64,000 bases of DNA, from assembly GCA_002104945.1 (NCBI GenBank), contig MCFH01000002.1:248001-312000 (forward strand), written 5' to 3'. Shown one piece after another: positions 2,098 to 64,000 of the stretch; position 1 is the stretch's first letter, and every line of letters starts with the position of its first letter. Below the pieces are notes generated by a model. That model ran no database searches. It had not been told where the DNA came from and saw only the letters and a list, made by a program, of their open reading frames with translations. Source of the DNA: Piromyces finnis finn. Taxonomy: Eukaryota > Fungi > Neocallimastigomycota. Position numbers and translations under genes: made by a program.

Positions 2098-3084
2098 TTA
2101 TTTTGAATTCTTTGCTTTACCCTTATTATTATTATTTTTATTATTTTTTTTTATTATTGGAGCAGTCGTTTTTAATATTTTCATATTTGTTTTAAAATAA
2201 TTCGATATATTTTTTACATTATTGCTATCTTTAATCCATTGGAGTTTAACATCTGGATATATTCCTGAAATCAATTGAATAACATTTTTACAAATCTCTG
2301 TATCCTGTTAAAAAAAAATAAAAATACTTTTTTAATAATTCAAATTTTTTATTTTTTAGAATTTATATAGAATAACGTACTTTTAAAGCTATACATGAAA
2401 TCTTTTTTAAATTTGACATTTGACAAAGTTTATATTCTGAGCCAAGATTTAAAGGACATAAAATTTTATTTCCTGATAAATGAGCCATTATTGGAAAATG
2501 AGAATATAAATGTGTAGGTTTTATATCTTCTTTACATATTATTATAACTGATATTTTGTTATTTACATTTTGTGGATGATTTATTTCTTTATTTAAAGCT
2601 TGGGTCACAGAATTAATTCCGATATATATATTATTTAATATTTCTGGTTTACTTTTATCTTTACTATTAGAAGAATTAAATTCTTTTAATGGTAAAAGTA
2701 TTCTTTAAATTTTATTTAAAATAATTATAAAAAAAAGAAAGAAAAGAAATTCATCAATACTGCATTTCTATTATTATATTAATATAATACTTTATTAACA
2801 ATAACTACTTTTCTAATTCCTGTAAAATTCTTTCATTATTTTCTTCTTCTATCTTTGGCCTTTTTATGAAATAATATAATTATTAATAAATAAAAATATA
2901 ACATTATATTTTCTTAAAACTACTATAATTACCAACGATAATTTAAAGGTGAATCAAAAATGCTCTTAAATATTAATCTTTTTCCTTTTGTCTTTAAAGA
3001 CTTTATATCATCCTGAATAAACTTTAATGAGGAAGTTGAACCTTCTTTACTTAAAGTTTCAATATTATTAGTTTTTTTTTCCAT
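2098..3084 (-). CDS. POP3: RNase P/MRP subunit Pop3/Rpp38-like (L7Ae fold), multi-exon
   Basis: Spliced reading MEKKTNNIETLSKE...KRLIFKSIFDSPLN...KPEILNNIYIGINSVTQALNK...SVIIICKEDIKPTHLYSHFPIMAHL...LGSEYKLCQMSNLKKISCIALK matches the Pop3/L7Ae pattern (G-x-N-x-V-T; H-F-P). Confidence 0.65.
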
Positions 3085-3287
3085 TTTACTTTATAAAAAA
3101 AAAAAGCACACAAAAATTTTTAATTATTATAATTACATTTTCATTTTATTTAATTTTATAAAAATTATAAATTTTATAATATTTTAAATTATGATTGGTT
3201 CATCAATTAAAAAATCCAAATTATAATTTTCTATAACATTTAAAAACTTGTTTAAAAAAAAATTAAAAGAGCAAAATAAAACCATTT

Positions 3288-4361
3288 TTAGCTTTTCTTT
3301 AAATAAATAATGTGATATTCTGATTCTTGAAATTCAGCTATTAGTTTTTTATTGTCAATCTAAATAATATAAAATTATTAAAAAAAAAAAGTCAATAAAT
3401 TAAAACATTTATTTTTAAAACTTTATATAATTTTATTTACATATTCAATATTAAATCCTTCATTTTTAGCCAATTCAAAGAAATTTTCTTCACCAAGATT
3501 TCTTGTTTTGTAAATAAATACACATAAGGTATTTTCATTGCATATATGTTGAAGAGTTTCAATGAGTGCTTTATGACTTTTTGCATAATAAAGAATTTCA
3601 GAACCAAAAACAATATCAAATGTATCTAAATCCTTACAATTGCTTGCACCCCTAAAAAATAATAGAAATTTTTGTTATTTTTTAATATTATAAAAAAAAG
3701 TTAATAATTTTAATATCATTATTTTTTTTATGAAATATTTCTTACCAATTCAAAGTTTTAATTCTTATATTTTCTTTAAAAAGTTTTACCCCGTTTATTG
3801 ATTGATTATTATTATTATTATCTATTTCCTTTAATACTTTTTCAACATTTGTATTTACATTTTCTTCTACTAGAGGAATAACATCTTCAATATCAGTTAA
3901 AGTAACATCTGCACCATATGTCCAAGCAGATAGTCCAACCTTTCAAAAATAAAAATAATAATAAATTACTATAAAATTTAAATTTTTGAATCTAGAACTA
4001 ATTTACTTTTAATCGTACCAATCCAGTTCCACAACCTAATTCAATACATTTTTTATTTTTTAATTTTAAACGGTAAAGATATTTTGATAGAATATAAGCA
4101 CCATCCCAAACTAAATTTCCAGTATTTTGGTGTAAAGTAATTTCATTGTCTAATTTTTGTTTTATTTTTACTTCTTTTTTATATAATTAAAAAATTAGTA
4201 TTAAATTTCTATTTTTTTTTTTTTTTTTAAAAAAAAATAAAATAAAATAAGGGCATATATATATAATACACACATAAATAGTTATTTATCAAATAATCCC
4301 TTGATTGTGAATATTTTTGGTCTACATATATATTTTTATATACCCAAGGCACTAAACTCAT
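3288..4361 (-). CDS. Seven-beta-strand lysine methyltransferase, METTL21/Methyltransf_16 family, multi-exon
   Basis: Exons read LHQNTGNLVWDGAYILSKYL, CIELGCGTG|LVGL (motif I), VTLTDIEDVIPLVEENV and FDIVFGSEILYY (DxxY-like motif). ATG at 4361; TAA at 3288-3290. Confidence 0.85.
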
Positions 4362-5010
4362 TTTTTAAAAATATTATTTTTGAAACAAAGAATATAAAAA
4401 TTTTTTTTATAAAAAAATAAAAAGTTAACTGTACATTATACACCAAAAAAAAAATTAATTAAATGAACAAATTTTAATATAATAAATCTTATTTAATATA
4501 ATAATGAAATATTTTTAGATTAAAACCAAAATAACAACAAAACATTTAGTTTTTATTTTTTTCCTTTACTTTTTTCTTATATTTTTATATGTCATTGTCA
4601 TTGAATACTTTTTTTTTTCTTTATATTTTTATAATATACATAATTTATTATTACTAAAAATATATATATATTTTTTTTTAAATATATTTATTTTTATAAG
4701 TATTTTTGATATATATGATATAAATGTATGTTTGATTTTTATTTGTTCTTTTATTTTGTTTAATATAATTCAACAATTTTTATATATATATATATAATTA
4801 TATAAATATATATTTATTTATTTATTTATTTAGGTATTTGATTAGTTTGCCTTCAATTATACTATTATAATTATATTGGTTATTGAATAATATAAAAAAG
4901 GAATTTCATTTATGAATTTCTTAAATTTGTATTATCTTTTCAGTAAAATTAAATATATTTTTAAAAAAAAGAATTTATATAACATTTATATAATTTTTTA
5001 TTTTTAAAAT

Positions 5011-5939
5011 TCAATTTTCAGTTAATTCTTTATATTCATTGTATTTCTCATTTATCTTTAAAGATAAATTTGTTAATTCTACGATTGAAGTTAGAGCTAA
5101 AAATAATGATGATATTAGGAATAAATGGTAACAATACATTTAAATATATAATTAATAAGTAATAAGAATAGAAGATAAACAAAAATTATTTAATTTTGAA
5201 ATTACCATTTTTAAAATCTTTTTGAGAACTTCTTAAACTTTGAGGTACTAAAACACCATACCATAATAATGGATTTCTAAATTTAACTTCTTCTATATTT
5301 GTTTTATTTTGTTCTGTTTTTTCTTCATTATTTCTATTTTTTATATTTGATTCATTTTCTGTTGATTTAACTTTCTTTTCATACATTTCACCACCAAGCT
5401 TAAATTGAACTAATTCTTTGTCATCTATCTTATCACTATCGTCCAAATTATAAAAAATAAAAAAGTCCAGAAATTAAAAAAAAAAAATAAAATAAATAAA
5501 TATATTTCTACTGCATTATTGTTTAAATATAATTTCTATTTAATTTGTACCATGTAATTTTAGCACCACATGTCATTCTTTTATCATAACTTAAACTAGT
5601 AAAGGCACCAGCACCAAGACTATATTTTGATTTTGCTAAATTGAAATAACCCTTGATTCACAAATTTATTTAAATTTTATTTAATTTCAATATATATGAT
5701 TATTGAATATATATATAATATATAGTGTATATTAATAAAAACATATATGAGAGGTTATTTTGTTGTTACAATAAATAAGCATATTTTTTTTTTAAAGTGT
5801 TGTAATTTTCTATTAAAAATTTGTCTAATACCGATGAAAGTTCCTTGTTGGACTTTATTCTAATTTCATTGAAATTTTCAACCAATTCCAAAAGTTCAAA
5901 TAAGCAATTATCTATGGCATCCAATTTTTCTTGACTCAT
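5011..5939 (-). CDS. VMA22: V-ATPase assembly factor Vma22/CCDC115, 4 exons
   Basis: MSQEKLDAIDNCLFELLELV...GYFNLAKSKYSLG...RNPLLWYGVLVPQSLRSSQKDFKN|ALTSIVELTNL; DPL-W(F/Y)G-LVP-SLR-AQ-F is the CCDC115 signature. Confidence 0.85.
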
Positions 5940-47810: not shown

Positions 47811-50570
47811 ATGTTTGCTACAAATAATCAAAATCAAAATGACAATATGTCATACTATAATGGTTTAAATAAGCCTCATTGGTTAAATCAAACTTTAAAA
47901 GGTAAAAAGAAAATTAAATAATTACAGAAGCATTTTATATATGTTTACCAATTTTTAAGAGAAATTATTTATTAATTGGTATTTTTAATTCTAATGATTT
48001 TTTTTTTTTTATTAAAAAAGACGATGAAGAAAATGGTCAAGATATTCCATATGGATTACCAAACACTGATAATTGGAAGGCTGTTGGAAGTCCACCAAGA
48101 AGAATGTCAATTTCTGGTTTACAACAACAAATGATTGATGATAAAGTAAACAATAAAACAGGATTATTAGGCATTGATGATCTTTCTGAAGTTAAAAGAA
48201 GAAGCAGAGCAGCTTCAACCCCTGTTCCTCCAATGGGATTAAATAATGATTTATTTTCATACCAATTTAATGCAGCTACTATGTCACCAATTTCTTTAGC
48301 TGACTCTAAGACAGAGGATTCAACTGAAAATTATTATGGCATTCGTCAAGCTCAACAATGTCAACAATGGAATGAAAGAAACTGGTCTCCATCTCAAACT
48401 AATCCAAATTCTTTATGGAACCAAGAAATGTCATTAAAATCTAATGCTAATAGTATTACTGAAGAAGATCATACTGAGTTGAGTGAAAAAACTGGCTCCT
48501 ATGCTGTTAATAATAATAGTCATTTATCTACTCCACCATTAGTTACTTTAACTACAGCTGATGCTGCTGCTTCTACTATGACTTCAACCGTTGATTTATC
48601 TTCATTACCATCCACTCCAGAAAATCAAATTACTGGAGAAAAAAATGAACCCAAAAATAGTGATGCTGATGGTAGTGAAAAGGAAGCCACTTTATCAAAG
48701 CAAAAACCAGCTGTTGGAAAGATTAGAATCAATACTAATTTAAACCGTGTTGGTAAATTAGAAATGCCAGAGAATAAGGAAGTTCAAGGAAGACACAGAA
48801 GTTCCTCAATTTCTGTTGGAGCATTCAGTGCTCAACAATTCCAACCATCTATTCCTGAAGCTGATGAAGAACAGACAAACAAGCAAGATATATCCTCTTT
48901 CTTAAAGCCAAATAATGTAGAAATGTCCCCATTGAACTTTGGAAGAAGTAACCTTCAACAAAATGCCTTCCTTTCTTCCTTAAATTATGAAGTTCCAAAG
49001 TCAAGAACTCGTTCCAAGTCATCTTCTGAAATTTATGGTAAATTTGCTGAACAAAATCTTTCTAATTTATTGAATAGTGGTCTTGACATCAATGGAATTA
49101 ATAATTATGTTAATGCTTTAGGCGGTATAAATAGCCCTCTTTGGCGTAATAATAATTATAACTTATTACAAGCATTAATGGCAAATTCTCGTAATGGACC
49201 AGCCTCAGCTTCTTTAGTTAATAATATGGCTCAAATGTCTTCTTTAATGGGTAATGATTTATCTAATCTTCATCGTAGATCATCTACTCAGCCAGCTTAT
49301 TCTAATTTTTGGGGCACAACTGGTATTCCAAATGGTACCATTGATGCCAGTGCAAAAAATCCAACATCCCCACTTTCACCAACCATGCCAACAGCATCCT
49401 CTGTCATTACATCACCAATTATATCACCAAACCATGTATCCATGAATAGTAATGGTGGTATTTTGTCTCCACAATTAGGTTATTACCAAAGTACTACTGT
49501 TGCTCCAAATCTTTCCTTAGCTTCACCAACTTCTCAAAGTGCAGGATTGGGTTTTAATCGCTATGGTATCAGTGAAGATGCATTAAAGAACGAAGAAAGT
49601 ATGAGAAGAAATTCACTCACTGGTTCTTTATATGCTTCATTAATGAATGCCAATGGCGGTAACATGAATAGTGCCGGTAATAATAATACCGCAAATGGCG
49701 GTGAAGCTTCTTCTAATGATGAAGTTAAGAAGGCTCTTTCCAACCAAGGTTCCGATTATGTTAACGAAATAGATGATTACTTTGAAAACACTGAACATCG
49801 TACTCGTGCCTGGGTTGAAGCTGGTAAAAATTTACAAAACCAACAGTCTTCTCAACACTGGCCTTTATATATTGTAGAATTCAAGGCTGGTAGAACTGAT
49901 TACTTTTATATTTCTGAAAAGAGTGGTTTGGTTGTAAAGGTTAACGATTTAGTTATTGTTGAAGCTGATAGAGGAAAAGATTTGGGTAAAGTTGTAGCTA
50001 GTAATATTACTAGTTATCAACAAATTCAAGCTTATCAAGCACAACATACAGAGGAAGGAATGGAAATTCAAAAAGATATACAAATTCATCCAAAACGTAT
50101 TTATAGACTTGCACAAAAGGCTGAAATTGATATGTTAATTTCTAAATGTCAAGATGAAGTTAAGGCGAAGAACTTATGTCAAACTAAGGTTCGTCAAAAG
50201 AAACTTCCAATGGAAATAGTTGATGCAGAATTCCAATGGTAATTTAAAAATAGATATCTTTTTTTTTTTTTTTTTTTTTACATCAATAACATTTGTAATG
50301 AATCCAATAAATTTTAGCGAATCATTATTAAATAGATATTTTTATTCCATAAATATAAAATAGGGATAGAAAGAAGTTAACTTTTTATTTCGTTTCCGAT
50401 AGACGCATTGATTTCCGTGAATTAGTTCGTGAATTGTTTAAAATATATAAGACAAGAATTTGGTAAGTATTATAATAATTTATTATAGGTCATTGACCCA
50501 TAAGAGTATTAATTATATTTATAATTTCAAATTAAATAGGATGTGTGCTGTCTCTTCTATTCCAAATTAA
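47811..50570 (+). CDS. PSP1 C-terminal domain protein with a long low-complexity N-terminus, 4 exons
   Basis: [15 protein letters not shown]...[21 protein letters not shown]...KRIYRLA...[12 protein letters not shown]|[33 protein letters not shown]|MCAV matches the PSP1 domain consensus. Confidence 0.9.
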
Positions 50571-51776: not shown

Positions 51777-54700
51777 ATAGTAATAGTTCTAATAATCCGG
51801 TGAATATTAATGTGTATGATTATTCTAGTGTGTGCAGTAAAATATTTAAATTCCTTCTTGGGGGAAGAAGTTTTAACAATATTAATTACAATTCAAGGGA
51901 ATGGAAAGAACTTTGTAAGCGTCAGATTCAATCTGGTACTAATGAAGGAACACCATTCTTGACGGGTCCTCTTGGGAACGTGCCTTCATTTATTTAATAA
52001 ATGTAGTTTCTCAAGGGGGTCTACTCATGCTCATGGTACTGAGAGAGTAGAAAGAATTAAATCCAAGTATTGCGCAATGGATGCTTGGTTAGTCTTTAAG
52101 GGAAAATTATTAGGACTAAGCTCATGGTACTGAGCGATTAAAAAACATTTTATTCATCGAATTTAAGTATTTGATGAATAAGTTGAATGTTTGATACTCA
52201 GGTAAGTTTGTATAGTATTTAATTAGAAGAGTAATACATTTTGTTGCTGTATTTTTTTTCTTTTATTCATGTATTCATGTAGTACTACTCTTCTCTTGTA
52301 AGAATCCAATGTAGTCAACTTTAGCATTTGCATTGTATTTTTATATTCATGTAGCTATTGTTGTATTGTTTCTTGTAAGAGACTGATTCACTCTACATCA
52401 TGTAAAAATACTATTCACAAGCTTTCTGGTGTCGACATTCTTGATTCAAATTTTTTACCAATTTAAATATTTAATGAAAAGAAAAGTCAAACAAGTTTAG
52501 TGTCAAAAAGCGAATCGAATTTACTAACAACAAACCAAAACTAGAATTTTTAAAGAAAATTTACAACTAGAATTCAAAAAAAAGAAACTTTAAACAAAGC
52601 ATCGTAACAATTTTTGTACTATCCAGTACTTTTAAGAAGAGAGAGAGAGACAGATTTTTTTCCATATACGTTATATTTGTAATTTTTATTAGTATTTATT
52701 TTATATTCAATATTTTTTAATTAGAATTTATTATCATGTCAGTCCTTTATATTAAAGATAAGAATTATATCAGACGTGGTACCCGGTCTTATAGTATCCC
52801 CTTAGATGATATTCGCTCCTTCTTTATCCGTGGTATTCGATCATGGTCAGTAAATATGCTATGGGAAAAACTCGAGGTTATTCTAGAAGATAAATTTAAT
52901 TCAGTTATTAGTGTTAAATATTTTCAAACTTTCAATGATCACTTTTTCTTAGTCAAGGTTCATGGTTCATCAAAAGATTGTATTAAAATCTTACACATGT
53001 TAAAGAAGAAACTTTCAGTTACCTCAATTTCCTTTTCAGCTCGTAGTAGAAGGAATCACAAATACACTTTTTCCACTCTCAAACGTAAAATTTTAGTTTC
53101 TAATAAACATCAACATTCTATTCAACATTCATTTCAACAATCAGTTCAACAATCTCATCAACAATCCGATCTTCAACAAGATCTTCAACAAGATCTTCAA
53201 CAAGTTTCCCATCATGAAAATATTCCAGATCTACAGCAAACACAATTTCAATCTCAACATTCAACAATTAATTCTAATAGTTCTATCAACTCTGATAACA
53301 GTTCAATAGTTGATAGTTCTTCAGTTTCACAGCCATCTAGTAATAGTTCTACTTATTCCTCTGATGCATCATCCATTAATAACGATGACTTTAATAATAA
53401 TAATAATAGCAACGATTCTTCCTCATCCAACAAGCCTGATAACTTTTCTTTTTGTCTTAGTTGGAACACCAATGGGTGGAATCACGAAAAGAGAGATAGT
53501 ATTAGCTATTTCACAGTTATTTTCAAACCATTATTTTTATGTTTCCAAGAAACTGGTAATGGTTCTGGTTCGAATACAGATTATCCTTGTCGTGTTACTT
53601 TGCGAAACTATAGACACTTTTTCAAGAAAGCTGACGAATCAGTTCCGGGAATGAGAGGTTTATATTTAGGTTTTCACAATTCGTGTCAAGCCTCACTTGA
53701 AAACTTCTCTGGAAAGTATATTATTTCTATTTATACTTTTAGTCTCTGGAATAGATTCAAATGCTCGATTGGAAATGTTTATATGCCTCATAGTCATCAC
53801 AACATCTATGTTGATCATGCAAAGTTAGAAGTTCGCTTGTGGTTACAAACTCATTCATCCCATCCATCGATTCTTGTTGGTGATTTTAATATGTCTAAAG
53901 TAAAATTATCCAACTGGTTATCAACTAATGGATTAGGAGATTGGGAAATTCTTCCGCTTAGAGGGTCGACTATCTCTTGGACTCGAGGTGAACAATCTTC
54001 CGACATTGACCATGCTCTTATCAATTCGAAGATGAAAGATCTTATTCACTCAGGATCATTTATAAATAATTTTTATCCTGTATCAGACCATAAGCCACTT
54101 CTTATTAATGGTAAAATTATTCCTATGGAAGATTTTTCTAATGACTTTAATGTTCCTAAGAAAATTCTGAAATGGAATAGATTAAAATGTATTGAGGAAA
54201 AGGAATCTATTCTTAGTCATAATAAATTCCAAATTCTTTCAGCAAAATTCAACGATCCTAATGTTTCTACAGATGAACTTTCCAAAGAGTTTACTTCAAC
54301 TGCTTTTTCAATTGCAGACGAGCTCAGTATTACCTCAGCAAATAATGTTATAAAGTCTTCATTTCATATTTCACAACAAATTTTTAATCTCCAAAAAATC
54401 AAAATGAAGTTGTATAAGAGATTTAAAAAAGAAAGAATTTATGATATAGATGAATTTATTAAAAGAATTAAAATCTACCATAAGCTCATTGATTACATCC
54501 ACAAAAGATGTAATGAATTTAGGAAACAAGAATATCTTCATTGGATTAAAACAGGATGTGAGTATATGAAGAGTCATAATCCTAAGAAGGCCTGGAAATG
54601 GATCAAGAAAACTGCAAAAATTGGAAAAGATTCTTTCTTTATTGCTCAACCAATTAAAAACAAAAATGGAGAATTAGTTGTTGCTACGGAAGAACAACTA

Positions 54701-57518
54701 GATGTGTGGCATGATCATTTCGAAAACCTTGCATCAGATCCAAGTGGTGTAAGTCTTGATTTAGAGCATTGGTATGAAGAACCAACGAATAAACGTTTTT
54801 CACTTCCTATGCTTGATGAGTGGGATATCAACCAAGATATTAGTATTGATGAAGTCAAGTCAGCTATCCTCTCTACTCCAAATTATAAAGCATCAGGTCC
54901 GGATGGTATTCCAATTGAATTTTACAAAGCATTAATTCCATCAAGTAATGATTCTAATAATGCTACAGATAATAATTCTTCCGGTAATACCACTTCAGAT
55001 AATGATGCTTATGGTTTAAATTTTATTCTTAAATTATTCAACCGTATTTGGGATGGAGATTTCCCCAACTCATGGAATGAATCCAGTATTGTTTCCATTC
55101 CTAACTAAGAAGGGAGATTTGACAGATTGTGATAACTATCGAGGTATATCACTTATCAATAATGGTATTAAGTTGATTTCCAAAATTGTCACCACTAGAA
55201 TTTCAGAATATGGTCTAAAGAATAATTTCATTAGACCTGAACAATTTGGTTTTCGAAAAAGGAAGAAAGTATCAGTCTTTTCATTTCAATCCAAGAAATA
55301 TGCCGTAGACGTCAATTAGATAATAAAGAGACATATTTGGCCTTTTTAGATTTCAGGAAAGCATACGATTCAGTCCCAATCGGTAATATTCTCCATAAAT
55401 TAGATTGTTTAGGAATCCGAGGTAAGAGTTTACAATTTATCAAAAATTTATATTTAACATCTAAGGCTAATGTCAAATTAGATGGACAATTCTCGAAATC
55501 TTTTGATGTGAAGAAAGGAGTCCGTCAAGGTTGCCCTCTTTCTCCTATTCTCTTTAATCTCTTTATTAATGATATATTTAAAGAGTGTGAAGATCTAGGA
55601 GTCAGTTTAGGTGACACTCGATGCTGTGGTGGACTTTTTGCAGATGATATAGTTATTTGTGCTCCAACAAGAGGATGCTTAAAAAAGATGCTTAGAAGAG
55701 TTAATGAATGGGCCTTGTATAATGAAATGGAATTTGGTATCCAGAAATGTTCAACGATGGTGATTCGTCCTGAATCAATAGAAAATCAGAACAAGAGAGA
55801 TCCAACATTTTACTTAGCAGGACAACCCATTCCAACTACTGATTGCTATACTTATCTTGGTGTTCCATTTGATAAGAATCTGTCCCTTAAACCAGTAATT
55901 AAAGCTCTTAATAACAAGGTTTTGAAAGGGCTTTTCTCAGTCAGTAAATTCTTAAGAAATCCTAATATTCCTATTCCTTTCAAAAAGCTAGTACTTAACT
56001 CACAAGTGATTAGCAGAGTTTCATACTTTGCACCATTACTTGGATCCAACAAAGCTAGGTCTAGGATTGCTCAGAAGCATGTTAACAAAGGAATACGATG
56101 GATTGCCGGAGTTCATAAAGCTGTATCGTTTATATCTTTATACTCTATTTCAAAAGATTTGAATATTCCTCCATTGTCAGCCAAATGTGCGTTAGCTCAG
56201 GTTAGATGTTTTAACAAATGGAAAAACTCAAATTGTATTATCTCACACCTTGTCAATTACATTCCTAAATTTAGAAAATACACGTGGTGCAAATCAAGTA
56301 GGACACTTGATAAAAAATTAAAGAAACATGGAGATGTTAAAGCAGTTAAAAACTTTTATTGGAAAGATCTCAAAGGGAATTCAATCAAAGCGCAATATTA
56401 TGATGATAATAAATTTATTGAAACTAAAGATTTTATTAAATTATGTTATGAATACCCAGAGTTTGCCTATGGCTTCTACTGGCTATTGAAAGCAAGAAGC
56501 GGATACAAGTTGGATGCTAGAGTTGCCAAAGCTGCTAAATTTGTTGATCCAGTTTGTCCTAACTACTGTCCATGTTGCAAGTGTGGAGATCAAAGTATTA
56601 AACATTGGTTATTAGATTGTCCAACATTTAGAGATATCCGTATTAAACATTATGATTCTATAATCCAGCTATTAAATTTTTTCAGTCAACGTAATTCCAA
56701 TAGTCCTATCAATAATAATGAAAATGTTAATATCAGCAGAGATAGCAATAACAGTAATAGTAATAGTAACAATAGTAGTAATAACAATAGTAATAGTAAC
56801 AATAGTAATAATAACAATAGTAGTAATAGAAATAGTAATAATAACAATAGTAGTTATAGAAATAATAATACTAGTAATGATAGCAATAGTGAAGATAATA
56901 ATTCTAATTTAGATAGTAATTTAGTTAATGATAGTAATAGTTCTAATAATCCGGTGAATATTAATGTGTATGATTATTCTAGTGTGTGCAGTAAAATATT
57001 TAAATTCCTTCTTGGGGGAAGAAGTTTTAACAATATTAATTACAATTCAAGGGAATGGAAAGAACTTTGTAAGCGTCAGATTCAATCTGGTACTAATGAA
57101 GGAACACCATTCTTGACGGTAACCGCGGAACTTCTAACCAAAATCATGCCTTTTGCTATTGGCCAGCAATGGTCAATGTTCAAAAGGTTTGAAGCAACAT
57201 CCAAGAGCGTCAATGCTGAAGAAACAGTAAGACAGGCCAGGAGGGCCAGCGCAACCAATGGAGATCATAATTTTGTCCCATGATAAAATTTTGATCTTTG
57301 GCTCGGTGTCCCATTGGAAGTCAAATACAATTATTATACTTTAGTATGATAGTGGCTTTCTTACTTTAATTAAAATTACTAGAATACATTATACCCAATT
57401 TTTATTCATTTGTGTTTATTTAAACATATTTTTTTTATTTTTATTTTATTTTAATTTTTATATTTCATGTATTATAATTTTAATTAAATTAATAATAAAG
57501 TTTAAAATATTTGATGCC

Positions 57519-59817: not shown

Positions 59818-62800
59818 ATGAATGAAATTGTTAGGTTACTTACTTCTATGAAAGTAGATGAAAATGGATTAATTTCAGATCGAAATTTTGTAAAAGACAT
59901 TATTCGAAAGGTTGGAGGTGATAAAAATTTAAAATCATCTTTAAAAAATTCTTATTTGCCATATACATCATGGTATATTGTTAATATCCAAGATATCCAA
60001 GAGAATAATAACAATGTTAAAGAAGATGAAGATTATGAAATTGTATTGATTCGTATCTCTACCATTAATGAAGCATTTGATGAATACGAAAAGCTTATTC
60101 AAAATGAATATATTCTTAACAAAAAGTTGTTAGACTATGGTGTTTCTCCAAAATTCAAAGGATATTCTTTTTTTGGAAAATGTATGTGTGTTTCAATATT
60201 TTTTACTTATTGCCACAATACTTTAGCAGAATATATGGAAAAGAATGATTTTAAGAATATCTTAAAGGAATTAGTTCATAAACTTTATTTGATACACCAC
60301 CAAGAAAATGGAAATTACTGTATCTTACCTACATTATCACCATACAATATTTTATGTTCTAAAAATAATCTATGCCCCATTATTTTCTCTGAAATATTTT
60401 TGTCCAATGACTCGGTTTCTTTAATGAATAAATTAAAGAAACCTCAAAAACACAACTGGTTCGTTCCTGAATTTAATCAGCTCGGTGAATCTGAACAATA
60501 CCAATTATCATATTATTCATCTATTCATTCCTTTGGTTACATCCTTTATTATTTATTGACTGGTAAAGCACCACTTACTTCAGATGAAGAATGGAAAATA
60601 TTTTTTGAAGAAAGATCTGATAATATAGAGCATATTCTTTTTAGAGATATCATTAAAGAATGTATTAGTGTTAGTGAAGAGAATAAAGTTTTATTTTCTT
60701 CATTATATAAAAAAATAAATACTGCTTGTGAGAAATCGTCATATAACCCGTTTACTAATGATTCTCTAAAATGTAATAAGGAATTTAATTCCGATAATAA
60801 AAATAAAAATAATAATAATGTTATATTATCATCCAAAAAACACACTATTTTATCATGTGAAGCATTTAATAATATTAATAATAGTAATAGTAATAGTAAT
60901 AGTAATAGTAATAGTAATAGTAATAGTAATAGTAATAGTAATAGTAATAGTAATAGTAATAGTAATAGTAATAGTAATAGTAATAGTAATAGTAATAGTA
61001 ATAGTAATAGTAATAGTAATAGTAATAGTAACAGTAATAGTAATAGTAATAGTAACAAAGATGAAAAGGAAAGAGATGATGAAAATTATAATGATAATAG
61101 AAACAAATTTATTTCATCAAATGATAAATATATGGATGGATTTACTTTTAAAGATATAGATTCAAAAAAGAAAAAAAGAATATATTTTATACATTTATGT
61201 ATTAGATTATATGAAAAAATAGATGATGATATAGAAGTATATGATTTATATAATCAAAACAATAGTTATAAATTATTAAAATATAATTATGATAATGATG
61301 ATGATACAAAGTATTTTTCAGTGGTACCTTTTTATGTTTATAATGGTATGAAATCAGTAGTATTTGGTGTGAGAAGTAGACTTAATATAAATAATGATAT
61401 AAAATTATTAGAACCAAAAGCAAGTAAAATTAAAAAAACTAATAGATATAGATATAAAGTTATTTTGACAAATGTAAGCCCAGATATGTATATTAAAATA
61501 TATAAGCCGATTTATAAAGATGTATTAACTTACCTTAGACAAATATCTTTAATTAACCCTAAAAATTATGAATATCCATATCAATATATATCTGAATTAA
61601 CAGAAATGTTATCAAATTATGATTTAGTTGATATAATATTGAAAACCGGATTTAATCCTTTTGCTAAAGTTATTATTAATATATTAAGGTCCAGAAATTA
61701 CTCACTAAAAGATATATCAAAATATATTGATAATAATTATAAGGTTAATTCAAATAAATATAAAAATGCTCCTGAATTAATATACGAATTAAATAAGGAA
61801 ATAGATCTTGATAATAATCAAGAAAATAACAATATTGATGAAAAAGTGATTATTGATAAAAAAAGAAATGAATTATTATGTGACGAGAAGTTTTACTCAA
61901 ATGAAAATAAAACAGATCAAAAGAAGGATATCGTGACTGATGTTATGGAAATGATGCCAAATATTCTTAATAGTGAATATTTTGATTATATAGATAAAAA
62001 CTTTTGTCAGAAGAAAATAGAAGAATATAACAATTCTCCAGAAGGTCAAAAAAGAAGAATAACTACAATTTTAACTCCTGAAACAATAAAGAAAATAAAA
62101 CAAATTATTTTTGGTTTATTGGCAAATACCCCAATGATTATAAAAGGTTTTACTTCTGCTGGAAAAAGTTTCAATGCTATTGTAAGTTCTGTTATTCATG
62201 GAGGTCAATCTCCTGTTTCAATAGTCCTTTCAGAAAATACAACAGTAGAAGATTTGTTAGGAAAATACATTTTACAAAGAAAAGAGTCATCAATGATGTC
62301 TTTTGTTCCAGGTGTATTGTTAAAAGCTTATATTGAGGGAAAAATACTTATTTTAGATGAATGTGATTTAGCCAAGCCTGAAGTTTTATCTTGTATTTTA
62401 GGATCTTTATCAAAAGACGAAATTACTGTAAATAATAGAATTTATAGAAAAACAAAAGGTTACAATGTTATATTAACTATGAATGGTGAAACAGAAGGGT
62501 TCACTAGTACTCAAAGAAACGAACTCAATTTAAATATTTTATCAAAATTTGTTATCATAGAATTTGATAAAATGAGTAAAGAAGAATGTGAACTTATATT
62601 TATGAAGCTTATGCCTAATGCTTATAAACAAAATGTTCCTAATTTTGTAAATTTACATAATAGGATGTTAGAATATTCACAAAAGACAATTGATCCTATT
62701 GTTACCTTAAGAAATTTAAAAGCATGTATTTATTTATTGAAAGTTAATATACCAGTTAGAGCCTCGGCTGAAATTGCTTATTCAGGAAGATTTCCTATTG

Positions 62801-64000
62801 ATGAAAGAAATGAATTTAATGATATTCTTGGTAACTTTGGAAGTGATGATATTGATAGTAATATTAAGAAAGAAATAATTAAAAGGTTTGATGAGTATAA
62901 TTTATACTATAATGACTCCTATTTAAAATGTGCTTACTTAGCATTGTCGGCATGTAAAGCTGGTCTTCACCCTCTTTTAATTGGTAAAAATGGATCAGGA
63001 TTAACAGAATTAGCTAAATTTGTTGCTTGCAATTATTCTATTAGTACTGATACATTTTTAAGTGAATCTAAAAGGACTAATGTTGAAGTAGTATGTCTTG
63101 GTTCTGAAACATCAACAGATGATTTAGTGGGTTGTTTCCAGCCAATATTATGTAAAACTGAAGATTTAACCAAACTTATTTCATGGGTAGATGGTCCAAT
63201 TTTTAGAGCAGGAAAAAGTGGAAATCCTGTAATATTAGATGGAATAAATTGTGCTAAATCACAAGTTATAGAATATTTAAATCCATTGTTGGAAGATAAT
63301 TCAGTTTTTAATAATGTTAAATTTAATGTAAAAGAAAAGGGCGATGAAGAATATGTTAATATAGAAAAAGGCTTTATAATTATTGGTACTATGAAGGTAG
63401 AAGAAGGAATAGAAAAGATATCAAAAGCTTTGATGAATAGATTTGTAGCTATATATTTGGACGACTTTTCATTAAATGCTGAAGTAATTGAAAAAATAAC
63501 ATATTTAACAGTTAAAAAACTTGAAAATAAAAATAAAAAAAGTTTTGAAGTAGATGACACACTAACTAATAATTGTGATTATAATAAGATTGAAAATGAA
63601 AGTTTATTAGAAATGGAGGATGAAAGAATTGAAAGAGATGAGGAGGAGGATGAAATCACTTCAGAATCAGACTTTGATGAAGAAGAAGATGGTCAAGGTA
63701 TTGTATTTTCAGATTCAAATGAGGAAGAAAGTGAAAATGATAAAGAAGGTGAATTTAATAACTTATCACATTTTACTAACGAAAGAAATAATGCCAATAT
63801 TTCTTCGGAATATTCAAATGATAATTGTGAAACAAAGGAAGAAGACATTCCTAATTGGTATAATATGAACAATTTTAATAGTATAAATATAAAAGAAATA
63901 GTAGAACTACTTAAAAATGTTGAATTTAAAAATATTAAGACGTTAATTAAAACAATTACTAAATTATATTATATTATTCAAAGAACTAAAATGTCTGGTT
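59818..64000 (+). CDS. Large protein: N-terminal pseudokinase, (SN)n linker, unassigned domain, and at least two midasin/MoxR-like AAA+ modules; runs off the window
   Basis: I read this frame codon by codon from ATG 59818 to 64000 and found no stop (at least 1394 codons). Kinase-fold remnants: IFFTYCHNTLAEYM, LYLIH, PTLSPYNIL, WFVPE, SIHSFGYILYYLLTGKAPL. AAA1: GFTSAGKS / TTVEDLLG / ILILDECDLA. AAA2: GKNGSGLT / TSTDDLVG / WVDGPIFRA / VILDGIN / ALMNRF. The start is uncertain because a possible acceptor TAG lies at 59800-59802. Confidence 0.85.
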   Translation, partial: MNEIVRLLTSMKVDENGLISDRNFVKDIIRKVGGDKNLKSSLKNSYLPYTSWYIVNIQDIQENNNNVKEDEDYEIVLIRISTINEAFDEYEKLIQNEYILNKKLLDYGVSPKFKGYSFFGKCMCVSIFFTYCHNTLAEYMEKNDFKNILKELVHKLYLIHHQENGNYCILPTLSPYNILCSKNNLCPIIFSEIFLSNDSVSLMNKLKKPQKHNWFVPEFNQLGESEQYQLSYYSSIHSFGYILYYLLTGKAPLTSDEEWKIFFEERSDNIEHILFRDIIKECISVSEENKVLFSSLYKKINTACEKSSYNPFTNDSLKCNKEFNSDNKNKNNNNVILSSKKHTILSCEAFNNINNSNSNSNSNSNSNSNSNSNSNSNSNSNSNSNSNSNSNSNSNSNSNSNSNSNSNSNSNSNKDEKERDDENYNDNRNKFISSNDKYMDGFTFKDIDSKKKKRIYFIHLCIRLYEKIDDDIEVYDLYNQNNSYKLLKYNYDNDDDTKYFSVVPFYVYNGMKSVVFGVRSRLNINNDIKLLEPKASKIKKTNRYRYKVILTNVSPDMYIKIYKPIYKDVLTYLRQISLINPKNYEYPYQYISELTEMLSNYDLVDIILKTGFNPFAKVIINILRSRNYSLKDISKYIDNNYKVNSNKYKNAPELIYELNKEIDLDNNQENNNIDEKVIIDKKRNELLCDEKFYSNENKTDQKKDIVTDVMEMMPNILNSEYFDYIDKNFCQKKIEEYNNSPEGQKRRITTILTPETIKKIKQIIFGLLANTPMIIKGFTSAGKSFNAIVSSVIHGGQSPVSIVLSENTTVEDLLGKYILQRKESSMMSFVPGVLLKAYIEGKILILDECDLAKPEVLSCILGSLSKDEITVNNRIYRKTKGYNVILTMNGETEGFTSTQRNELNLNILSKFVIIEFDKMSKEECELIFMKLMPNAYKQNVPNFVNLHNRMLEYSQKTIDPIVTLRNLKACIYLLKVNIPVRASAEIAYSGRFPIDERNEFNDILGNFGSDDIDSNIKKEIIKRFDEYNLYYNDSYLKCAYLALSACKAGLHPLLIGKNGSGLTELAKFVACNYSISTDTFLSESKRTNVEVVCLGSETSTDDLVGCFQPILCKTEDLTKLISWVDGPIFRAGKSGNPVILDGINCAKSQVIEYLNPLLEDNSVFNNVKFNVKEKGDEEYVNIEKGFIIIGTMKVEEGIEKISKALMNRFVAIYLDDFSLNAEVIEKITYLTVKKLENKNKKSFEVDDTLTNNCDYNKIENESLLEMEDERIERDEEEDEITSESDFDEEEDGQGIVFSDSNEEESENDKEGEFNNLSHFTNERNNANISSEYSNDNCETKEEDIPNWYNMNNFNSINIKEIVELLKNVEFKNIKTLIKTITKLYYIIQRTKMSG
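60883..61056 (+). repeat. Coding (AGTAAT)n hexanucleotide repeat encoding (Ser-Asn)29
   Basis: 174 bp of AGTAAT units (two AGTAAC variants), in frame within the 59818 ORF. Confidence 0.95.

What the first reader, a model, noticed from the sequence alone, without database searches (positions are those of the whole stretch)
59818..64000. Pseudokinase fused to tandem midasin-like AAA+ modules: a giant ATPase with non-canonical architecture
Seen in sequence: a stop-free frame of at least 1394 codons, absent from the ORF track. Residues ~45-305 follow protein-kinase subdomain order but lack catalytic motifs: no Gly-rich loop, VAIK->VLIR, HRDLKPxN->LPTLSPYN, DFG->SEI, APE->VPE, and the subdomain IX Asp absent (SSIHSFG). 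Two AAA modules with midasin/MoxR hallmarks follow. AAA1 has an intact Walker A (GFTSAGKS, 62146-62169) and Walker B (ILILDE), but Lys at the Arg-finger position (LSKF). AAA2 has degenerate Walker A (GKNGSGLT) and Walker B (VILDG) but keeps the Arg finger (MNRF). An acidic tract follows at ~63595-63760. Established knowledge: canonical Rea1/MDN1 has no kinase domain and has six contiguous AAA modules. Pseudokinases act as switches in MLKL-type signalling, and giant AAA proteins such as RNF213 act in innate immunity. Inference: a lineage-specific midasin-derived sensor or remodelling machine, possibly in non-self recognition or defence, located beside TE insertions. This is the best candidate here for an undescribed protein system.
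Basis: partly seen in the sequence, partly recalled or inferred. Interest (0 to 1): 0.75.

Follow-up and report, generated by a model that had tools for sequence, protein, structure and literature searches.

The report
Pseudokinase-headed midasin-like giant ATPase
The window holds the first 1394 codons of an intact 6265-residue gene of an anaerobic gut fungus: a second, very divergent copy of the ribosome-assembly motor midasin, with a catalytically dead kinase domain at its front, from a small gene family that nobody seems to have described.

Summary
The stop-free frame runs 18.8 kb and encodes 6265 aa without introns.

- **Kinase-like head (aa 1-310).** This is a true protein-kinase fold. 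A profile of the family alone hits RAF, JAK2, TTK and MLKL, and an AlphaFold model (pLDDT 84) matches only kinases. It lacks the Gly-rich loop, the VAIK Lys (Arg here), the HRD Asp (Thr here) and the DFG Asp.
- **Body.** After the head come an N/S-rich spacer, a family-specific domain with no detectable relatives, six AAA_5 modules, a 2600-aa linker, a MIDAS-type vWA, an unknown domain and a second vWA.
- **Not the orthodox MDN1.** That gene lies on another contig (5486 aa, 1916 bits to yeast Rea1, against about 82-116 bits for this gene).
- **Ring pattern.** Walker A/B motifs are intact in AAA1, 3 and 5. The arginine finger is kept only in AAA2, 4 and 6.
- **Relatives.** One full paralogue sits in this genome. 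Others are in Neocallimastix, Pecoramyces and many metagenome contigs. One lineage carries SAM domains instead of the kinase-like head.
- **Defence role.** Nothing found here supports it.

The scan had already noted the family on other DNA of this genome (the paralogue).

Verdict: a real, undescribed variant of a known kind.

The parts
59818..64000 (+). 5' part (aa 1-1394) of a 6265-aa intronless ORF that continues to window-equivalent position 78612 (G000:C112:307818-326612)
   Evidence: no stop in 6270 codons
59818..60747 (+). N-terminal kinase-like domain (aa 1-310; kinase core about aa 45-305), predicted catalytically dead. It has R79 at the VAIK Lys position, T172 at the HRD Asp position and no DFG Asp or Gly-rich loop. 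E97, N177 and E192 are invariant in the family.
60748..61107 (+). Low-complexity spacer (aa 311-430) with a long (Asn-Ser)n run at window 60865-61062. It is the least conserved part: 33% identity to the paralogue.
61108..62052 (+). Family-specific domain directly before AAA1 (aa 431-745). It is conserved in all family members and has no detectable relative in PDB, Pfam, the ESM Atlas or the N-terminal domain of this genome's own MDN1.
62053..62937 (+). AAA1 module (aa 746-1040): Walker A GFTSAGKS (62146-62169), Walker B ILILDE (62344-62361), Lys at the arginine-finger position (LSKF, 62539-62550)
62938..64000 (+). AAA2 module (aa 1041 to about 1440; cut by the window's end): degenerate Walker A GKNGSGLT (62983-63006), Walker B VILDG (63229-63243; VILDE in the paralogue), arginine finger kept (MNRF, 63433-63444)
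63592..63759 (+). Acidic insert (aa 1259-1314, 50% Asp+Glu) between AAA2 and AAA3, in a stretch that is variable between the paralogues

Best explanation
**What it is.** This is the 5' end of an expressed-looking, intact gene for a 6265-aa single-chain AAA+ mechanoenzyme. It belongs to a divergent paralogue family of midasin (MDN1/Rea1) that so far is seen only in anaerobic gut fungi (Neocallimastigomycota) and in metagenome contigs of similar base composition.

**Shown**
- Domain order: kinase-like domain, low-complexity spacer, family-specific domain, six AAA_5 modules (aa about 750-2800), a linker of about 2600 aa, a MIDAS-type vWA with an intact DxSxS motif (about aa 5495-5680), an unknown domain of about 300 aa, and a second vWA with DxSxS (about aa 6095-6240).
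- The kinase-like head has the kinase fold but lacks the catalytic set.
- In the ring, AAA1, AAA3 and AAA5 keep Walker A and Walker B but have lost their own arginine finger.
- AAA2 and AAA4 have degenerate nucleotide motifs but keep the finger. AAA6 keeps Walker A, has a D-D Walker B, and keeps the finger.

**Inferred**
- In Rea1, module n+1 supplies the finger for site n. On that rule only sites 1, 3 and 5 would hydrolyse ATP, each completed by the following even module, giving a three-fold alternating ring.
- ATP-driven ring and linker movements pull on a protein ligand held by the metal-ion sites of the C-terminal vWA domains, as Rea1 does with Ytm1 and Rsa4. The substrate here would be different and is unknown.
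- The dead kinase domain acts as a docking, targeting or regulatory module, not as an enzyme. Related lineages use tandem SAM domains in the same position.
For: - **ORF continuity.** 6270 codons are open here and 6239 aa in the colinear paralogue at about 60% identity. Metagenomic relatives of 6523 and 6656 aa carry kinase-like head, family domain, AAA ring and C-terminal module in one uninterrupted ORF. The Neocallimastix californiae gene model ORY29839.1 joins kinase-like and AAA parts.
- **Kinase fold.** The ESM Atlas top ten are all Pkinase at 0.97. The profile of the two paralogues found only 17 hits among 1.84 billion representatives, including genuine kinases and P0006, which passes the Pfam Pkinase cut-off. 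A family-only profile hits B-Raf at E 2e-5, then JAK2, TTK and MLKL. The AlphaFold model has pLDDT 84 and pTM 0.85. In Foldseek every listed match of at least 500 at E<=0.001 is a kinase, led by c-Raf, B-Raf and IRAK4.
- **Dead catalytic set.** It is conserved across the family (alignments; by eye).
- **Not the orthodox MDN1.** The C174 gene scores 1916 bits colinearly to Rea1 and carries the midasin lid domain. The present gene scores 82-116 bits.
- **Six modules and their motifs.**. The rule that module n+1 donates the finger, and that Rea1 sites 2-5 are the active ones, comes from PMC6286127.
- **MIDAS homology.** The best PDB hit of the C-terminal profile is the Rea1 MIDAS domain 6qt8_A (E 0.006), aligned over the segment leading into DxSxS. 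BLAST to this genome's own MDN1 MIDAS gives E 1e-4.
- **Purifying selection.** The paralogues are 73-77% identical in AAA1, AAA3-5 and the MIDAS vWA, 68% in AAA6, 56% in AAA2 and 52% in the kinase-like head.
- **Variable head.** Tandem SAM_1 scores 29.7 bits against a cut-off of 23 in relative L024.
Against: - No transcript or protein data were available, so single-transcript status rests on ORF continuity and conservation.
- Similarity to midasin outside the AAA modules is weak. The MIDAS match has E 0.006. There is no linker similarity and no midasin lid-domain hit.
- Module-by-module scores support only an odd/even class correspondence, not strict positional orthology.
- The model used an alignment that included two genuine kinases, which could bias it towards the kinase fold. 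The family-only profile result is free of that bias.
- Motif-based calls of active and inactive ATP sites, and of a dead kinase, are predictions. Some pseudokinases still bind nucleotide or catalyse by unusual residues.
- The substrate and cellular role are unknown.
Confidence: 0.8

Rival explanations
1. Immune-like sensor. The family would be a non-self-recognition or cell-death machine. Exchangeable N-terminal modules (pseudokinase or SAM) would sense or signal, and the AAA/vWA body would act as the switch, by analogy with NLR/STAND proteins, MLKL or RNF213.
For: - The N-terminal module differs between lineages: kinase-like or tandem SAM.
- It is the least conserved globular part, at 52% against 68-77% for AAA1, AAA3-6 and the MIDAS vWA.
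- The nearest solved folds include immune TKL kinases and pseudokinases such as IRAK4, Pto and the RKS1 chain in the ZAR1 resistosome, and MLKL.
It judged that adjacency not conserved.
Against: - PADLOC shows only generic AAA matches.
- There are just two intact copies per genome, not an expanded, diversifying family.
- No conserved defence neighbour is present.
- No death, TIR or nuclease effector domain was found in either half.
- The best-conserved parts are the motor and the vWA tail, which is typical of a housekeeping remodeller.
Confidence: 0.12
2. Atypical active kinase. The N-terminal domain would still transfer phosphate or another nucleotide-derived group using non-canonical residues (invariant R79, E97, N177, E192), as WNK, SelO or some other 'pseudokinases' turned out to do.
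For: - R79, E97 (the alpha-C Glu position), N177 (the catalytic-loop Asn) and E192 (within the DFG-equivalent motif) are invariant in the family. An active-site-like constellation is therefore kept.
- From memory, mammalian KSR also has Arg at the VAIK Lys position and still binds ATP.
Against: - There is no Gly-rich loop.
- The HRD Asp is replaced by Thr, Asn, Phe or Tyr in different members, so no common catalytic base exists.
- No DFG Asp is present.
- This protein gives no Pfam Pkinase match even at E<=1.
Confidence: 0.1
3. Two genes or a decaying relic. The kinase-like part and the AAA part would be separate transcription units that happen to be in frame, or the ORF would be a non-functional remnant.
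For: - No expression data were available.
- The spacer is a low-complexity (Asn-Ser)n run.
- A broken fragment of the 5' end exists on contig C2.
Against: - 18.8 kb without a stop in DNA of 18-26% G+C.
- The same colinear fusion occurs as one ORF in the paralogue and in at least three further lineages of 6000-6650 aa.
- The start codon aligns between the paralogues.
- Identity differs by region in a way that fits purifying selection.
Confidence: 0.04

Closest known systems
Midasin (MDN1 / Rea1), the pre-60S ribosome remodelling AAA+ ATPase
   Same: - Single chain with six tandem AAA_5 (MoxR/dynein-clade) modules.
- Odd and even module classes, with split even modules.
- A linker of several thousand residues.
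- A C-terminal MIDAS-type vWA with DxSxS, whose lead-in segment aligns to the Rea1 MIDAS domain.
   Different: - Only 82-116 bits to Rea1/Mdn1, against 1916 bits for this genome's true orthologue.
- No midasin lid domains and no detectable similarity in the N-terminal domain or linker.
- No D/E-rich region before the MIDAS domain.
- Predicted active sites are 1, 3 and 5. Rea1 uses sites 2-5.
- An extra kinase-like head, and an extra unknown domain plus a second vWA after the MIDAS domain.
TKL-group kinases and pseudokinases (RAF/KSR, IRAK, MLKL, plant RLCK pseudokinases)
   Same: - Best sequence-profile and fold matches.
- Arg at the VAIK Lys position, as in mammalian KSR (from memory).
- A non-catalytic kinase fold used as a scaffold or switch in a larger machine.
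   Different: - About 12-17% identity to the solved kinases.
- No Gly-rich loop at all.
- Fused to a 6-kb motor and not to RBD, death or four-helix-bundle domains.
- Pfam Pkinase is not reached by this protein itself.
MoxR-vWA chaperone pairs (RavA-ViaA, NorQ-NorD, CbbQ-CbbO) and human VWA8
   Same: AAA_5 modules are coupled to a vWA/MIDAS domain that holds the client. NorQ, CbbQ and CobS are the next-best solved matches of the AAA modules.
   Different: Those are homo-hexamers of one-module proteins with the vWA on a separate chain, or short fusions such as VWA8. Here six differentiated modules and two vWA domains sit in one 6265-aa chain. VWA8 was not compared directly.
Dynein heavy chain and other rings with dedicated catalytic and non-catalytic AAA modules
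   Same: A single-chain hexameric ring in which only some sites hydrolyse ATP and the others are structural or regulatory.
   Different: No dynein stalk, microtubule-binding domain or tail. The strict alternation (1, 3, 5 active; 2, 4, 6 as finger donors) is not the dynein pattern.

Membership tests
Midasin (MDN1/Rea1) orthologue | Six tandem AAA_5 modules in one polypeptide | tested here: met
   Pfam AAA_5 scores 242 bits with multiple stretches. The jackhmmer map places modules at aa 770-940, 1053-1244, 1456-1631, 1784-2057, 2205-2388 and 2519-2760.
Midasin (MDN1/Rea1) orthologue | Strong colinear similarity to Rea1/Mdn1, including the midasin AAA lid domains (PF17865/PF17867) | tested here: not met
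   82-116 bits in scattered stretches. Neither PF17865 nor PF17867 appears in the Pfam scans. In this genome PF17865 hits only C174, whose gene scores 1916 bits in one colinear stretch to Rea1.
Midasin (MDN1/Rea1) orthologue | Functional ATP sites AAA2-AAA5, with AAA1 and AAA6 lacking Walker B (PMC6286127) | tested here: not met
   Here AAA1, 3 and 5 have Walker A plus hhhhDE. AAA2 and AAA4 are degenerate. Arg fingers are present only in AAA2, 4 and 6. The genome's own MDN1 shows the canonical pattern in the same alignment.
Midasin (MDN1/Rea1) orthologue | C-terminal MIDAS (vWA) domain with DxSxS | tested here: met
   DFSSS at aa 5505. The C-terminal profile's best PDB hit is the Rea1 MIDAS domain 6qt8_A, E 0.006. 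BLAST to the MIDAS region of this genome's own MDN1 gives E 1e-4. The homology signal is weak.
Midasin (MDN1/Rea1) orthologue | D/E-rich region between linker and MIDAS | tested here: not met
   No 100-aa window of the protein exceeds 30% Asp+Glu. The only acidic tract is the 56-aa insert after AAA2.
Protein kinase-like superfamily (fold) | Bilobal kinase fold and significant profile similarity to kinases | tested here: met
   The family-only profile hits B-Raf at E 2e-5. Relative P0006 passes the Pfam Pkinase cut-off. The model (pLDDT 84) gives only kinase matches in Foldseek, E 6e-9, TM 0.5-0.6.
Catalytically active eukaryotic protein kinase | Gly-rich loop, VAIK Lys, HRD Asp and DFG Asp | tested here: not met
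   No GxGxxG. R79 replaces the Lys, T172 replaces the HRD Asp, and F-S-E sits opposite D-F-G. All are aligned to genuine kinases, and the same losses occur across the family.
Pfam Pkinase (PF00069) as annotated domain | Score above the gathering threshold | tested here: not met
   No match even at E<=1. UniRef nevertheless names the Neocallimastix orthologue 'Protein kinase domain-containing protein'.
Known anti-phage/defence systems (PADLOC) | Match to a defence-system model beyond generic AAA similarity | tested here: not met
   Only weak P-loop matches (IetA, mad8, TRIP13) over Walker A regions.

The most novel reading that the evidence does not exclude
The family would be a previously unrecognised class of single-chain AAA+ mechanoenzyme, derived from midasin and re-purposed for a process other than ribosome assembly. 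It would run on a three-fold alternating ring (sites 1, 3 and 5 active; modules 2, 4 and 6 as dedicated arginine donors). An exchangeable N-terminal adaptor (pseudokinase in some lineages, SAM in others) would aim it at its target, and a double-vWA tail would grip the client. The role could be an immune-like or organelle/cell-surface assembly function specific to anaerobic gut fungi.
Probability: 0.2. Interest if true: 0.8.

Novelty: new variant of a known kind. Interest (0 to 1): 0.6.

Why it matters
Midasin is usually treated as a single-copy, highly conserved eukaryotic gene with one job. Here an early-branching fungal lineage keeps the orthodox gene and has also evolved a second midasin-type giant in which nearly everything around the ring is remodelled:
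- a dead kinase or SAM head;
- a new pre-ring domain;
- alternating active and inactive ATP sites;
- an unrelated linker;
- a doubled vWA tail.

It offers a natural experiment on how such rings can be rewired. It is also a new example of a pseudokinase recruited as a module of a molecular machine, and a conspicuous 19-kb gene of unknown function in organisms of biotechnological interest. Public databases list the relatives only as hypothetical or automatically named proteins. No paper in the searchable library describes them.

Tried and rejected
- **First AlphaFold run.** With only the two paralogues aligned, the model was unusable (pLDDT 40). It was replaced by a 16-sequence alignment.
- **Profile A2.** It hits B-Raf at 1e-19, but it contains genuine kinases, so I discounted that result. 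The test was repeated with family-only profile A3.
- **Pre-AAA domain (aa 431-745).** No hit in PDB by profile at E<=10. hhalign against the N-terminal 400 aa of this genome's own MDN1 gave probability 0.2. No usable ESM Atlas hit and no Pfam hit. Whether it replaces the Rea1 N-terminal domain stays open.
- **Domain at aa 5701-6080.** It has no Pfam hit and no convincing PDB hit, so I did not adopt that name.
- **Other relatives' N-termini.** P0059, P0060, P0063 and P0064 gave no Pfam hit outside the AAA region. These are prokaryote-style gene calls on short contigs, so a missing head is not proof of absence.
- **PADLOC.** Nothing specific.
- **Literature.** Searches for midasin with Neocallimastigomycota, pseudokinase, paralogue, or MoxR/vWA found no description.
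- **Species name.** I could not confirm it from papers.
- **Reference limit.** Loci are capped at 10 kb, so the whole 6265-aa protein could not be given as one reference. It was searched as two halves and by domains. The word search's length window (1833-5833 aa) excluded full-length relatives, some of which were recovered through cluster listings.

Full report
**The ORF.** The window is G000:C112:248001-312000 of a 56.5-Mb, 232-contig assembly with about 18% G+C. From window 59818 the + strand is stop-free to the window's end. On the contig the frame stays open for 6270 codons, C112:307803-326612, giving a 6265-aa protein from the first Met. It was absent from the ORF list only because it runs off the window. 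At this base composition roughly 9% of random codons are stops, so an 18.8-kb open frame must be maintained by selection (my estimate).

**Organism.** The closest named relatives are from Neocallimastix californiae and Pecoramyces ruminantium. The organism is therefore an anaerobic gut fungus. I could not verify it from papers.

**Is it the orthodox midasin? No.**
- A search of the genome with the midasin lid domain PF17865 hits only contig C174, at 126 bits, in a 5487-codon open frame.
- The first 2433 aa of that gene align colinearly to yeast Rea1 at 1916 bits.
- The finding gene reaches only 82-116 bits against the same structures, in scattered AAA stretches.
- BLAST against this genome's own MDN1 gives 21-27% identity in AAA modules, plus one short match in the MIDAS region.
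- In the large protein collection the family scores 286 bits or more. The score then drops to 145 bits or less for canonical midasins of fungi, plants and animals.

**The N-terminal domain.**
- Pfam reports nothing for aa 1-450, even at lenient thresholds. Several independent lines still show a kinase fold.
- The nearest protein-language clusters are all Pkinase families, at 0.97, for ten of ten.
- phmmer's best PDB matches are the B-Raf subdomain VIII-IX region.
- A profile of the two paralogues found only 17 proteins among 1.84 billion representatives.
- The close ones are gut-fungal or metagenomic family members. P0006 (E 4e-30) itself passes the Pfam Pkinase cut-off, and P0011, P0015 and P0016 are ordinary kinases.
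- A profile built only from family members without a Pfam kinase match hits B-Raf at E 2e-5, followed by JAK2, TTK and MLKL.
- With a 16-sequence alignment, AlphaFold gives pLDDT 84 and pTM 0.85. Foldseek returns at least 500 matches at E<=0.001, and every one listed is a protein kinase: c-Raf, B-Raf, IRAK4, Pto, KSR1 and others, with TM 0.5-0.6.

**Catalytic residues of the head.** Aligned to genuine kinases:
- the Gly-rich loop is absent;
- the VAIK Lys is R79;
- HRDLKPxN reads L-P-T-L-S-P-Y-N, so the catalytic Asp is T172 while N177 is kept;
- APE is VPE.

These losses are shared by the paralogue and by distant family members, in which the HRD Asp position is Thr, Asn, Phe or Tyr. R79, E97, N177 and E192 are invariant. 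The domain is an old, maintained pseudokinase, not a decaying one.

**Between the head and the ring.** An N/S-rich spacer with a long (Asn-Ser)n run covers aa 311-430. A 315-aa domain (aa 431-745) follows. It is conserved in every family member directly before AAA1. It has no detectable relative in PDB, in this genome's own MDN1 N-terminus, in Pfam or in the Atlas.

**The ring.**
- Iterative HMM searches map six modules in the finding protein, its paralogue and the orthodox MDN1. The even modules are split in all three.
- Module-against-module scores show that odd modules match odd MDN1 modules best and even modules match even ones. This suggests descent from the midasin-type (odd-even)x3 ring, although positional orthology is not resolved.

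| Module | Walker A | Walker B | Arg-finger position |
|---|---|---|---|
| AAA1 | GFTSAGKS | ILILDE | Lys |
| AAA2 | GKNGSGLT | VILDG (VILDE in the paralogue) | Arg |
| AAA3 | GTAGTGKS | ILVDE | Glu |
| AAA4 | none recognisable | LIIKG | Arg |
| AAA5 | GPPGRGKT | LLLDE | Leu |
| AAA6 | GDIGTGKT | ILIDD | Arg |

(All.)

- In Rea1 the finger for site n comes from module n+1, and sites 2-5 are the functional ones (PMC6286127).
- Applying the same geometry here predicts three complete sites, 1, 3 and 5, each finished by the next even module. This is an inference from motifs.
Other notes of this scan reached the same pattern on this gene and on the paralogue.
- The acidic tract (aa 1259-1314, 50% Asp+Glu) is an insert after AAA2, in a stretch that varies between the paralogues. 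It is not the counterpart of midasin's D/E-rich region, which is missing here.

**The rest of the protein.**
- The linker (aa about 2800-5440) has no Pfam, PDB or MDN1 similarity.
- A vWA domain follows, with DFSSS at aa 5505. A profile of the last 826 aa finds the Rea1 MIDAS domain as its best PDB match (6qt8_A, E 0.006), aligned over the midasin-specific lead-in to DxSxS.
- Next come about 300 aa without any family match, and then a second vWA with DVSGS at aa 6101 (VWA_2, E 1e-4).

**Conservation between the paralogues**:

| Region | Identity |
|---|---|
| MIDAS vWA | 77% |
| AAA5 | 75% |
| AAA1, AAA3, AAA4 | 73% |
| Unknown C-terminal domain | 73% |
| AAA6 | 68% |
| Second vWA | 61% |
| Pre-AAA domain | 58% |
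| AAA2 | 56% |
| Linker | 50-56% |
| Kinase-like head | 52% |
| Spacer | 33% |

**The family.**
- This genome has two intact members: the finding gene and a colinear 6239-aa paralogue at C1:2552610. It also has a broken fragment of the 5' end on C2.
- N. californiae ORY29839.1 (3622 aa) has the kinase-like head, the pre-AAA domain and the AAA modules in one model. UniRef names it 'Protein kinase domain-containing protein'.
- Metagenome contigs of 20-23% G+C carry colinear relatives. Among them are uninterrupted ORFs of 6523 and 6656 aa with kinase-like head, pre-AAA domain, ring and C-terminal module.
- All members examined that contain the AAA1 region share its Walker A GFTSAGKS, except for one GSTSAGKS and two in which my pattern search found none.
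- One lineage (L024; intact 6072-6074-aa versions exist) starts with tandem SAM domains, SAM_1 at 29.7 bits against a cut-off of 23. It has no kinase-like match.
The repeated one-ORF fusion argues strongly against two separate genes.

**Context.** Upstream lie a PSP1-domain ORF and a LINE (endonuclease plus reverse transcriptase, window 52736-57280). Downstream are two C2H2 zinc-finger ORFs on the minus strand. PADLOC gives only generic P-loop matches. Nothing here supports a defence role. It remains a minority hypothesis, resting on the variable head and on the TKL/MLKL-like affinities.

**Verdict.** This is a real, intact gene. It is a midasin-derived giant AAA+/vWA mechanoenzyme with a pseudokinase head, an alternating ring and an extended tail, distinct from the orthodox MDN1. 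It has relatives in at least three genera of anaerobic gut fungi and in metagenomes, and I found no description of it in the literature.

The mechanism I propose is inferred from motifs and homology only. The motor would hydrolyse ATP at sites 1, 3 and 5 and pull on a client held by the vWA tail. The pseudokinase would serve as a docking or regulatory module.

**Limits.** No transcript data were available. The protein had to be searched in pieces because loci are capped at 10 kb. Length filters hid some full-length relatives.

Noticed in passing
G000:C2:838238-839092 (-), outside the window: A broken partial copy of the 5' end of this gene. It covers the kinase C-lobe (aa 190-320) and the start of the pre-AAA domain (aa 441-541), is 74-91% identical, and has TGA and TAA stops. 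It looks like a young pseudogenised partial duplication.
   Followed up: partly
window 52736-57280 (+): A LINE with two ORFs lies about 2.5 kb upstream of the giant gene: Exo_endo_phos endonuclease and RVT_1 reverse transcriptase. Its G+C (about 30%) is higher than that of the surrounding DNA.
   Followed up: partly
window 48104-50239 (+): A 712-aa ORF ending in a PSP1 C-terminal domain (36.7 bits), in a block with 35% G+C.
   Followed up: no
G000:C112:328810-330693 (-) and 339909-341849 (-), downstream of the window: Two ORFs of about 630-650 aa on the minus strand, both with C2H2 zinc fingers near the N-terminus. They may be paralogues or element-borne genes.
   Followed up: no
window 60865-61062 (+): A perfect (Asn-Ser)n run of about 30 units inside the coding frame. 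The paralogue has poly-Asn/poly-Asp at the same place, so the spacer is a rapidly changing in-frame microsatellite.
   Followed up: no
L024 (ENA ERZ28019198 contig, 18.5 kb) and sister contigs: Metagenome contigs of the family are almost exactly gene-sized (18-20 kb). L024 has a single in-frame TAA at codon 4556, while sister contigs carry the same gene as an intact ORF of 6072-6074 aa. This is a variant, an error or a fresh pseudogene.
   Followed up: partly
G000:C174:78702-95159 (+): The orthodox MDN1 of this genome is also a single open frame without a stop (5486 aa).
   Followed up: partly
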